From: Octopus sinensis
Taxonomy: Eukaryota
NCBI RefSeq assembly: GCF_006345805.1
Contig: NC_043011.1
Coordinates: 56,308,464 to 56,372,463 of the forward strand
Direction of reading: 5' to 3'
Length of the DNA stretch: 64,000 nucleotides
Shown here: piece by piece, positions 252 to 55,118 of the stretch
How positions within the stretch are numbered: the first letter of the stretch is position 1
How the letters are laid out: each line of letters begins with the position of its first letter
The notes under the pieces: model-generated
What the model was told of the DNA's origin: nothing
Database searches by the model: none
Seen by the model: only the letters and a program-made list of their open reading frames with translations
Program-made: the position numbers and the translations under genes

Positions 252-427
252 CTTGCAATTCCGAATTCCTTGTTCGATCTTGTTGTAGAGCTGGTCACCA
301 CCACCCATCTGGCCAATGTCCATCCAACAAGAGATCCCAGCTCTTTCCAGCCTGTCCCACAGAGCCTTCACTGCATCTTGACTGTCCCACTGGTAACTGA
401 TGAACACTTGTGGGCAGTGGGATTGTT
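252..427 (-). CDS. ROCO exon 17 (TIR domain N-half): (E)QSHCPQVFISYQWDSQDAVKALWDRLERAGISCWMDIGQMGGGDQLYNKIEQGIRNCK
   Basis: Acceptor ttttgcttttccag, donor AAG|gtgaga; 176 nt, phase 1 to 0; box 1 FISY and W.D...GG BB loop of TIR_2-type domains. Confidence 0.93.

Positions 428-55118: not shown

What the first reader, a model, noticed from the sequence alone, without database searches (positions are those of the whole stretch)
252..55118. ROCO protein ending in Death + TIR: a candidate GTPase-gated innate-immune or cell-death scaffold
Seen: 17 phase-compatible exons give Roc-COR followed by a Cys/His segment, a Death domain and a TIR domain, with no kinase after COR. Established: LRRK1/2 have Roc-COR-kinase, DAPK1 has Roc-COR-Death, MFHAS1 ends at Roc-COR, and Death+TIR is the MyD88 adaptor pair. 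Inference: a MyD88-like DD-TIR cassette fused behind a dimerising Roc-COR switch could act as a nucleotide-controlled oligomerisation platform, functionally analogous to NLR/STAND receptors, with two signalling outputs. Related ROC-COR-TIR proteins exist in invertebrates, so novelty must be checked, but I know of no functional characterisation in cephalopods.
Basis: partly seen in the sequence, partly recalled or inferred. Interest (0 to 1): 0.75.

Follow-up and report, generated by a model that had tools for sequence, protein, structure and literature searches.

The report
Conserved ROCO–Death–TIR gene in octopus
The window holds 17 intact exons of a real octopus gene for a GTPase-switch (ROCO) protein ending in a Death and a TIR domain, but it is the ortholog of an already annotated invertebrate gene family whose function nobody has tested.

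Summary
Observation confirmed. On the minus strand, 17 exons (55118 to 252), all with AG/GT splice sites and compatible phases, join into one 879-codon frame without stops. Pfam places Roc, COR-A, Death and TIR_2 above their curated cut-offs. The COR-B end and a Cys/His module share one exon, which ties the GTPase half to the Death–TIR half.

The gene is cut by both window ends. Orthologs show that an N-terminal Neuralized (NHR) domain and the P-loop lie upstream. The rest of the TIR and a conserved C-terminal CxxCaaL lipidation motif lie downstream.

It is not new. Outside one exon that RefSeq mis-models, the model is 98% identical to Octopus bimaculoides LOC106875913. Colinear ~1260-aa orthologs occur in molluscs, annelids, nemerteans, rotifers, a priapulid, echinoderms, hemichordates and amphioxus. 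Uninterrupted contigs, read as mRNA, carry the whole reading frame. The architecture was noted in silico in 2016 and 2022.

The "MyD88-like" reading is not supported. The TIR is closest to NAD-cleaving TIRs (bacterial AbTIR, Cat1, SARM1) and keeps their catalytic glutamate; MyD88 has Phe at that position.

Most likely mechanism (inferred): a membrane-anchored, GTP-switched platform that brings the Death and a catalytic TIR domain together. No functional study was found.

The parts
54964..55118 (-). Exon 1 in window (155 nt, enters in phase with 1 leading nt): Roc switch I region, ...DDQPLESTDGVDLSESCSF...
   Evidence: Acceptor ttatttacag|AG and donor TTG|gtaaat. 98% identical to P0036 aa 211-263. 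The upstream P-loop exon is not in the window.
51526..51653 (-). Exon 2 (128 nt): conserved helical insert inside Roc, GGVAALEEEFTDSSALNVYLEMVLHQKEKE...
   Evidence: ctctcag|GC ... AAAAAA|gtaagt. Matches P0036 and P0037. The LEEE(Y/F) motif is conserved across phyla.
47383..47667 (-). Exon 3 (285 nt): variable Roc insert, then the G3/switch II motif IWDFAGQAVYYTTHQ
   Evidence: W176, D177 and G180 are invariant in 27 orthologs. The Pfam Roc/Ras hit lies here.
43908..44006 (-). Exon 4 (99 nt): Roc beta4, VFLSSRAVYVIVFNICDDL...
   Evidence: Present in Argonauta P0037 and in mRNAs P0038/39 but skipped in the O. bimaculoides RefSeq model.
35351..35536 (-). Exon 5 (186 nt): Roc G4 region, ...LSPPIFIVGTHRNSL...
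   Evidence: G268, T269 and H270 are invariant.
32753..32872 (-). Exon 6 (120 nt): end of Roc (G5-like FAVEN)
31757..31900 (-). Exon 7 (144 nt): start of COR-A, ...EPYMGEKIPTRWLQFED...
   Evidence: hmmsearch E 7e-16. Pfam COR-A covers model aa 347-507.
27770..27979 (-). Exon 8 (210 nt): COR-A core, ...FYHDLGVIIYYGG...LQWLVEMFRRVIT...
   Evidence: hmmsearch E 1e-22.
22223..22381 (-). Exon 9 (159 nt): end of COR-A, ...LLGLLQKFDLICKR...
   Evidence: hmmsearch E 2e-15. 100% identical to P0036.
19593..19722 (-). Exon 10 (130 nt): start of COR-B, ...ASYYVPSMF...FHGFLP
17717..17874 (-). Exon 11 (158 nt): COR-B, EALFHRILAHTIHWSQECGG...
   Evidence: hmmsearch E 1e-15. The fold search of an ortholog model matches the Roc-COR tandem of LRRK1, CtRoco and LRRK2.
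13312..13413 (-). Exon 12 (102 nt): COR-B strand, VVVMRVAEAREEDVYISDNGQKAPLVTSPQAVAK
   Evidence: Found by a splice-site and phase scan. Confirmed by P0036 and P0037.
11254..11433 (-). Exon 13 (180 nt): last COR-B helix (VRNFLDTTLLRLREVWMKRI) and the first part of the Cys/His module (SCPCGQLCDFHHISGCTAEICLHFLDLDECL) in the same exon
   Evidence: This one exon links the GTPase half to the Death-TIR half. C653, C655, H674 and C681 are invariant.
3707..3779 (-). Exon 14 (73 nt): second part of the Cys/His module, VICCGHRRMKTTFVQKWFPPHHTV
   Evidence: Found by a splice-site and phase scan. Matches P0016, P0036 and P0037. C689, T696, F703 and P704 are invariant.
2588..2746 (-). Exon 15 (159 nt): linker and first half of the Death domain, ...LPYWIKSAAKLLNNGVENLDWVCLANYLG
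   Evidence: Acceptor 2746 is preferred over 2710 because ALKKTILSNSLLE is conserved in Argonauta and in mRNAs P0038/39.
841..1014 (-). Exon 16 (174 nt): second half of the Death domain
   Evidence: hmmsearch E 1.5e-19. Pfam Death covers model aa 748-818. 100% identical to P0036.
252..427 (-). Exon 17 (176 nt): first 52 positions of the TIR_2 domain, PQVFISYQWDSQ...CWMDIGQMGGGDQLYNKIEQGIRNCK. The remaining TIR exons lie beyond the window start.
   Evidence: hmmsearch E 4e-30. Pfam TIR_2 43.4 bits. Donor AAG|gtgaga. No further C-terminal match in 1-251.

Best explanation
Identity (shown): the window carries the central 17 exons (protein residues ~211-1088 of ~1264) of an intact octopus gene. 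The gene is the ortholog of a conserved bilaterian family with the layout NHR (Neuralized repeat) - Roc GTPase with long inserts - COR-A/COR-B - Cys/His module - Death domain - TIR_2 domain - disordered tail - C-terminal CxxCaaL.

Mechanism (inferred from the parts, not tested):
- The C-terminal CaaX motif ending in Leu would be geranylgeranylated, which would tether the protein to a membrane.
- The Roc-COR tandem acts, as in other ROCO proteins, as a nucleotide-dependent dimer/monomer switch.
- The NHR domain, a SPRY-like peptide-binding beta-sandwich, is the likely input or partner-recognition module.
- The nucleotide state controls how the C-terminal Death and TIR domains are brought together.
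- Death-domain assembly would recruit other Death-domain proteins.
- TIR self-association would build an NAD+-cleaving or cADPR-producing active site around the invariant glutamate.

The logic is that of an NLR/TNL-type or bacterial ROCO-TIR system rather than of the passive adaptor MyD88.
For: One intact gene:
- 17 AG/GT exons form one 879-codon frame.
- Four Pfam domains score above their curated cut-offs.
- The model is 98.2% identical to O. bimaculoides LOC106875913 outside one exon that RefSeq mis-models.
- More than 60 colinear ~1260-aa orthologs carry Neuralized+Roc+COR-A+Death+TIR_2.
- The full ORF of P0038 lies uninterrupted on 4.6-6.3 kb contigs; 9 contigs carry it, and the five shown come from five different sequencing runs. 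I read these as mRNA.
- There are no gaps at any of the 16 exon junctions.
- The COR-B end and the Cys/His module share exon 13.

GTPase competence:
- P-loop GxxxxGKT, switch I Thr, DFAGQ and GTH are invariant or nearly so.
- An AlphaFold model of the Patella ortholog matches LRRK1, CtRoco and LRRK2 Roc-COR at E 1e-21 to 1e-14, and its N-terminus matches Neuralized NHR1 with TM 0.94.

Catalytic-type TIR:
- The TIR profile's best PDB hits are Cat1, BtTIR, AbTIR and SARM1. The invariant Glu (C-N-R-E-L) aligns with the Glu of their W/Y-x-x-E-L motif.
- The best fold matches are SARM1.
- MyD88 has Phe at that position.
- Many Glu-bearing non-TLR animal TIRs, including at least one from a Roc-COR protein, make cADPR in a Glu-dependent way (bioRxiv 10.64898/2026.04.20.719644).

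Lipid anchor: CxxCaaL is present in 27 of 27 full-length orthologs.

ROCO switching: GTP-driven monomerisation of CtRoco (bioRxiv 10.1101/2023.11.13.566844, abstract).
Against: - No experiment exists for any member of the family. No functional paper was found.
- The family's TIR signature strings are absent from the tested-TIR table of the 2026 preprint.
- The parts on which the mechanism leans most (P-loop, NHR, catalytic Glu, CaaX) lie outside the window. They are inferred from orthologs.
- Fold similarity to the MyD88 TIR (TM 0.75) is as good as to the SARM1 TIR, so structure alone does not separate an enzyme from a scaffold.
- The G4 position reads THRN rather than a D-containing motif in octopus, so guanine specificity is untested.
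- Expression in this species and any role in immunity were not tested here.
Confidence: 0.85

Rival explanations
1. MyD88-like passive adaptor. The Death-TIR cassette only scaffolds: the TIR binds TLR TIR domains and the Death domain recruits IRAK/Pelle-type kinases. There is no catalysis, and Roc-COR merely regulates availability.
For: Death is followed by TIR in the same order as in MyD88. The Aplysia study files its ROCO-Death-TIR protein under 'MyD88-like' (PMC9334734). The MyD88 TIR filament is a good fold match (TM 0.75).
Against: MyD88 is absent from profile hits at E<=1, whereas NADase TIRs score 1e-8 to 1e-6. The Glu is invariant at the catalytic position, where MyD88 has Phe. The Death domain is closest to p75NTR/NRADD, not to MyD88. 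TIR_2 scores 86.6 bits against 15.1 for the classical TIR model.
Confidence: 0.25
2. Two separate genes or transcripts: a Roc-COR gene (55118-11254) and a Death-TIR gene (3779-252) that only look joined.
For: The first, crude homolog search returned hits to either half but never to both. The Elysia model P0001 is a stand-alone 423-aa Death-TIR protein.
Against: The full-model search found more than 60 proteins covering 85-100% of the query in one chain. Contigs read as mRNA carry the complete ORF. All junctions are colinear. Exon 13 encodes both the COR-B end and the Cys/His module, and that module continues into the Death-TIR ORF of P0016. P0001 starts in what aligns to intron sequence and is probably a fragment model.
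Confidence: 0.02
3. A decaying pseudogene copy of the family.
For: No protein fully identical to the model was in the database. The gene is cut at both window ends, so completeness cannot be shown.
Against: There are no stops or frameshifts in 879 codons, and all 32 splice dinucleotides are canonical. Only 15 substitutions occur in 846 comparable residues, and every family-invariant residue inside the window is retained.
Confidence: 0.03

Closest known systems
NHR-Roc-COR-Death-TIR_2 orthogroup. Examples: Octopus bimaculoides LOC106875913, Saccoglossus 'neuralized PATS1', the 'protein neuralized' models of Elysia and Plakobranchus, and the ROCO-bearing 'AcMyD88' LOC101861518 of Aplysia.
   Same: Same exon-by-exon protein, 98% identical to the O. 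bimaculoides gene. Same domain order. Same invariant Roc motifs, Cys/His ligands, Death domain and TIR box (PMC9334734 Fig. 6; PMC5094078).
   Different: Nothing of substance. The window shows only residues ~211-1088. It does contain the Roc beta4 exon that the O. bimaculoides RefSeq model skips.
Echinoderm Roc-COR-Cys-Death paralogs ('roco4/6/8', 'pats1'-named models, for example Patiria LOC119731909)
   Same: Same Roc-COR with inserts, the same C...H...C...C module after COR-B, then a Death domain; 33-39% identity.
   Different: They lack the TIR domain and often the NHR. They belong to lineage-specific expansions.
Cnidarian 'Novel Gene 3' (kinase-SH3-Roc-COR-Death-TIR; Calliactis A0A1D8RAC4, Oculina models)
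   Same: Same Roc-COR-Death-TIR_2 core, 29-31% identity over 85% of the query (PMC5094078).
   Different: An N-terminal protein kinase and an SH3 domain stand in place of the NHR.
DAPK1 (and LRRK1/2, MFHAS1), the characterised animal ROCO proteins
   Same: Roc-COR tandem (fold match to LRRK1/LRRK2). DAPK1 also ends in a Death domain (established knowledge).
   Different: No kinase, ankyrin, LRR or WD40 domains. It adds NHR, the Cys/His module, TIR and CaaX.
MyD88
   Same: A Death domain followed by a TIR domain.
   Different: MyD88 is a ~300-aa adaptor with nothing else. Its TIR has Phe at the catalytic position and is not found by the family's TIR profile.
SARM1 and bacterial or plant catalytic TIR proteins (AbTIR, Cat1, TNL receptors, bacterial ROCO/AP-GTPase-TIR fusions)
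   Same: The TIR subtype, with the conserved catalytic Glu, gives the best sequence and fold matches. As in TNLs and the bacterial AP-GTPase systems, an NTPase switch is fused to a TIR effector (PMC8195603).
   Different: No ARM/SAM (SARM1), no NB-ARC/LRR (TNL). Catalysis is untested for this family.

Membership tests
ROCO proteins | Roc (Ras-of-complex) GTPase domain | tested here: met
   Pfam Roc 36.9 bits against a cut-off of 27 on the window model; 51.4 bits in P0037. DFAGQ and GTH motifs are present.
ROCO proteins | COR domain directly after Roc | tested here: met
   Pfam COR-A 66.8 bits against a cut-off of 35.3. The Roc-COR-A-COR-B fold of an ortholog matches LRRK1, CtRoco and MbRoco2 at E down to 1e-21. 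Pfam COR-B itself did not score on the octopus model.
ROCO proteins | Intact P-loop (G1) for nucleotide binding | tested here: inconclusive
   Not in the window. It is present as RTRLMLVGKDRVGKTS in the 98%-identical ortholog and is nearly invariant in the family.
ROCO proteins | GTP binding/hydrolysis and nucleotide-dependent dimerisation | not testable with these tools
   Needs biochemistry.
NHR-Roc-COR-Death-TIR orthogroup | Colinear full-length similarity to annotated members | tested here: met
   100% query coverage with P0036, P0037, P0038 and P0039. 98.2% identity to P0036 outside the mis-modelled exon. 40-50% identity to members in other phyla.
NHR-Roc-COR-Death-TIR orthogroup | N-terminal Neuralized (NHR) domain and C-terminal CxxCaaL | tested here: inconclusive
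   Both lie outside the window. They are present in every full-length ortholog examined.
Death-domain superfamily | Six-helix Death domain | tested here: met
   Pfam Death 32.4 bits against a cut-off of 22.6. The Elysia model has pLDDT >90 with six helices at residues 46-132. Sequence hits to the p75NTR and NRADD Death domains.
TIR domain proteins | TIR fold | tested here: met
   TIR_2 43.4 bits against a cut-off of 28, although only the first 52 of 122 profile positions lie in the window. A full TIR from an ortholog folds as a TIR and matches SARM1, TLR1, AbTir and MyD88 TIR domains.
Catalytic (NADase/cyclase) TIRs | Glutamate at the catalytic position | tested here: met
   E77 of alignment A4 is invariant and aligns with the ...EL Glu of AbTIR, BtTIR and Cat1. 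The residue is encoded outside the window.
Catalytic (NADase/cyclase) TIRs | Measured NAD+ cleavage or cADPR production | not testable with these tools
   Needs an enzyme assay. The family's signature peptides were not found in the tested-TIR table of the 2026 preprint.
MyD88 | Small adaptor made only of Death + intermediate + TIR, with a MyD88-type TIR | tested here: not met
   ~1264-aa multidomain protein. No MyD88 hit at E<=1 with the TIR profile. Glu is present where MyD88 has Phe.
DAPK1 / LRRK | Protein kinase domain in the same chain | tested here: not met
   No Pkinase hit in the window model, in P0037 or in the bilaterian orthologs.
SARM1 | ARM and tandem SAM domains before the TIR | tested here: not met
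   No ARM or SAM hits. The similarity is confined to the TIR.

The most novel reading that the evidence does not exclude
This family would be an animal counterpart of plant TNL receptors and of bacterial ROCO-TIR defence proteins. It would be a geranylgeranyl-anchored, NHR-sensing, GTP-switched enzyme. Its TIR domain would make a cADPR-type signal (or deplete NAD+) when Roc-COR and the Death domain drive assembly. A previously undescribed zinc-binding Cys/His module would couple COR-B to the effector domains.
Probability: 0.25. Interest if true: 0.7.

Novelty: already known. Interest (0 to 1): 0.3.

Why it matters
As a discovery it adds little. The gene is annotated in a sister octopus, is conserved across many invertebrate phyla, and its domain layout is in print.

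As a research target the family is attractive.
- It joins the LRRK2-type GTPase switch to a Death domain and to a TIR domain of the NAD-cleaving type.
- It was not seen in vertebrates, insects or nematodes among the hits examined.
- No experiment on it was found.
- Catalytic TIR signalling has only just been reported in animals.
- In humans LRRK2's Roc domain binds the NHR protein NEURL4 in trans (PMC4565672), and here NHR and Roc are fused in one chain.

A simple enzyme assay and a GTP-binding assay on this family could show whether animals have a GTPase-gated TIR enzyme.

Tried and rejected
1. A crude concatenation of the seven clearest exon pieces as query found only half-length relatives and wrongly suggested two genes. 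The spliced model found the full orthologs.
2. A 15- or 16-exon model that joined exon 1 directly to an acceptor at 47663 was in frame. It was replaced once orthologs showed the conserved exon 51653-51526 and the acceptor at 47667.
3. Acceptor 2710 for exon 15 fitted the length of P0016. It was rejected in favour of 2746 because ALKKTILSNSLLE is conserved in Argonauta and in the mRNAs.
4. Read-through of the donor at 11254 ('VSLPCSWHPI') resembles echinoderm sequence. It was rejected because AAG|gttagt is a strong donor and exon 14 supplies the true continuation.
5. A candidate P-loop exon at 63020-62903 ('TKGKTVKL') was rejected. It has no beta1 strand, the spacing to switch I is wrong, and orthologs do not match it.
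The Elysia Death-TIR protein and the Patella ortholog were folded instead.
7. The Cys/His module has no Pfam hit and no PDB sequence hit at E<=10.
8. Rfam found no RNA family in the window.
9. The supplements of the 2026 TIR preprint were searched for this family. It was not found.

Full report
THE WINDOW. It is AT-rich (GC 34-42%) and has no long ORFs, as expected for an intron-rich animal genome. Open stretches on the minus strand contain recognisable pieces of a TIR domain (about 252-449), a Death domain (836-1084 and 2523-2786), COR (19588-19722, 27758-28069, 31748-31900) and Roc (35258-35692, and 47143-47733 with DFAGQ).

GENE MODEL.
- tblastn with relatives and a profile search of all open segments fixed the cores of the exons.
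- Splice-site and phase analysis fixed their borders.
- Two short exons were found purely by searching for AG...GT intervals of the required phase: 3779-3707 and 13413-13312. Homologs confirmed both.
- One more exon (51653-51526) was revealed by the octopus ortholog.
- The final model has 17 exons from 55118 to 252. All have AG/GT borders. They total 2638 nt and translate to 879 codons without a stop.
- Pfam places COR-A (66.8 bits), TIR_2 (43.4), Roc (36.9) and Death (32.4) above their curated cut-offs, and finds no kinase.

ONE GENE OR TWO. The first homolog search used a crude concatenation as query. It returned Roc-COR proteins and Death-TIR proteins separately, so the two-gene reading had to be taken seriously. 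Four results exclude it.
- Exon 13 (11433-11254) encodes both the last COR-B helix and the first half of a Cys/His module. That module continues in exon 14 and, in a TARA metagenome ORF (P0016), runs without interruption into Death and TIR.
- A search with the spliced model found more than 60 proteins of about 1260 aa that cover 85-100% of it in one chain.
- One of them (P0038, 71% identical) is carried by 9 contigs. In the five places shown, each from a different sequencing run, it is an uninterrupted 3870-nt ORF on a 4.6-6.3 kb contig. Such contigs are most simply read as spliced mRNA.
- The alignment shows no gap at any of the 16 junctions.

WHAT THE FULL PROTEIN LOOKS LIKE. The closest relative is Octopus bimaculoides LOC106875913 (P0036, 1264 aa).
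- The window model equals its residues 211-1088 and differs at 15 of 846 comparable positions (98.2% identity).
- The remaining difference is a RefSeq model error. P0036 skips the Roc beta4 exon (44006-43908) and reads intron sequence instead. Argonauta and the mRNAs contain the exon.
- Upstream of the window lie a Neuralized (NHR) domain and the P-loop RTRLMLVGKDRVGKTS. The NHR scores 124.8 bits in Pfam, matches Drosophila Neuralized NHR1 at E 3e-30 by sequence, and has TM 0.94 by fold.
- Neither is in the window. There is no G-x4-GK[ST] motif on the minus strand and no credible tblastn match at E<=5.
- Downstream lie the rest of the TIR, a disordered tail and a C-terminal CxxCaaL (CNVL in octopus). 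This motif is present in all 27 full-length orthologs examined.

CONSERVATION (27 sequences, 7 phyla).
- In Roc, the P-loop, switch I (STDG), IWDFAGQ and IFIVGTH are invariant or nearly so. The Roc domain carries long, partly disordered inserts around a conserved LEEE(Y/F) helix.
- In the Cys/His module, C-x-C, H, C and C are invariant.
- Most phyla have an extra C-x2-H-x5-C-x5-C loop, which hemichordates and amphioxus lack. This suggests one core metal site plus an optional second one. The suggestion is an inference.
- The module has no Pfam hit and no PDB sequence hit.
- An AlphaFold model of the Patella ortholog (mean pLDDT 73.9) matches the Roc-COR tandem of LRRK1, CtRoco and LRRK2 at E 1e-21 to 1e-14.

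WHAT KIND OF TIR.
- A profile of the family's TIR hits Cat1 (E 8e-9), BtTIR, AbTIR, PdTIR and SARM1 (1e-6). TLRs score only 1e-4 to 1e-3, and MyD88 is absent at E<=1.
- The invariant Glu in C-N-R-E-L aligns with the Glu of the ...EL motif of AbTIR, BtTIR and Cat1. From my own knowledge this is the catalytic residue (AbTir E208, SARM1 E642).
- The best fold matches of the Elysia Death-TIR model are SARM1 structures. TLR1 and MyD88 TIR domains fit about as well by TM-score.
- A 2026 preprint lists Phe at this position in MyD88. It reports that Glu-bearing non-TLR animal TIR domains, including one from a Roc-COR protein, make cADPR in a Glu-dependent way.
- This family's signature peptides are not in that preprint's table of tested domains.
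- The Death domain is closest by sequence to those of p75NTR and NRADD.

HOW IT LIKELY WORKS (inferred).
- A geranylgeranylated C-terminus would tether the protein to a membrane.
- Roc-COR would provide the nucleotide-dependent dimer/monomer switch known from CtRoco and LRRK2 (10.1101/2023.11.13.566844).
- NHR would be the recognition module. Human LRRK2's Roc domain binds the NHR protein NEURL4 in trans (PMC4565672).
- Switching would control the assembly of the Death and TIR domains. The TIR would probably be catalytic.
- I put identity at about 0.97, a catalytic TIR at about 0.5, and the whole gated mechanism at about 0.25-0.35.

NOVELTY.
- Van der Burg et al. 2016 noted a 'neuralized' ... 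Death-TIR_2 architecture in Crassostrea and Strigamia, next to the cnidarian kinase-Roc-COR-Death-TIR gene (PMC5094078).
- The 2022 Aplysia immunome paper draws NHR/ROC/COR/Death/TIR proteins and calls one a MyD88-like protein with ROCO domains (PMC9334734).
- RefSeq annotates the ortholog in many species.
- No functional study was found.
- The finding is therefore real, correctly delimited and reasonably interpreted, but already known at the level of gene and architecture.

REST OF THE WINDOW.
- The introns are full of interspersed repeats.
- They contain LINE reverse-transcriptase fragments and microsatellites.
- No Rfam family was found.
- No sign of another gene was seen on either strand, although only the largest ORFs were scanned against Pfam.

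Noticed in passing
window 43908-44006 and 35537-35614: The O. bimaculoides RefSeq protein LOC106875913 omits the conserved Roc beta4 exon (VFLSSRAVYVIVFNICDDL...). It reads about 78 nt of intron upstream of exon 5 instead. The window, Argonauta and the mRNA contigs show the correct exon.
   Followed up: yes
outside the window (C-terminus of orthologs P0036-P0100): All 27 full-length orthologs end in CxxCaaL (CNVL in octopus). 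This is a CaaX box that predicts geranylgeranylation, with a second conserved Cys three residues upstream. The papers read here do not mention it.
   Followed up: partly
window 11254-11433 and 3707-3779 (model aa ~650-705): A conserved Cys/His module sits between COR-B and the Death domain: C-x-C-x3-C-x2-H-x5-C-x5-C-x-H...C...C-x-H. It has no Pfam or PDB match. The inner C-x2-H-x5-C-x5-C loop is missing in hemichordates and amphioxus. A simpler C..H..C..C version occurs in echinoderm Roc-COR-Death paralogs.
   Followed up: partly
window 47663/47667 and 51526-51653: Skipping exon 2 (128 nt) and using the AG four bases downstream (exon start 47663 instead of 47667) keeps the reading frame. This is a possible alternative isoform lacking the conserved LEEE helix.
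   Followed up: no
window 11532-11930: A ~400-nt (GAAA/AAGG)n array. On the coding strand it is a long polypyrimidine tract that ends about 100 nt upstream of the acceptor of exon 13.
   Followed up: no
window 26251-27239; 61271-61930: A ~1-kb imperfect (TG)n-type array (periods 16-18) that is open in all six frames, and a 32-bp unit repeated about 21 times.
   Followed up: no
window 45196-46849 (+), 36615-38231 (-), 9353-9550 (-): Degraded non-LTR retrotransposon pieces (RVT_1 and zf-RVT hits just below the Pfam cut-offs) inside introns 3, 4 and 13.
   Followed up: partly
window, more than 30 intronic loci (e.g. 3100-3399, 8800-9299, 14100-14699, 16500-17699, 56200-56699): Multi-copy interspersed repeats in both orientations, with up to 27 self-matches per 100-bp bin. 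None overlaps an exon.
   Followed up: partly
L001-L003 (TARA and other marine metagenome contigs): An intron-free ORF (P0016) that encodes the Cys module, Death domain and TIR of this family. It comes from an unidentified marine eukaryote and the contigs are only about 1.4 kb long.
   Followed up: partly
model aa 268-272 (window exon 5, 35351-35536): The Roc G4 position reads GTHRN in octopus and in the family consensus (GTHRD in Haliotis), not the classical NKxD. H270 is invariant.
   Followed up: no
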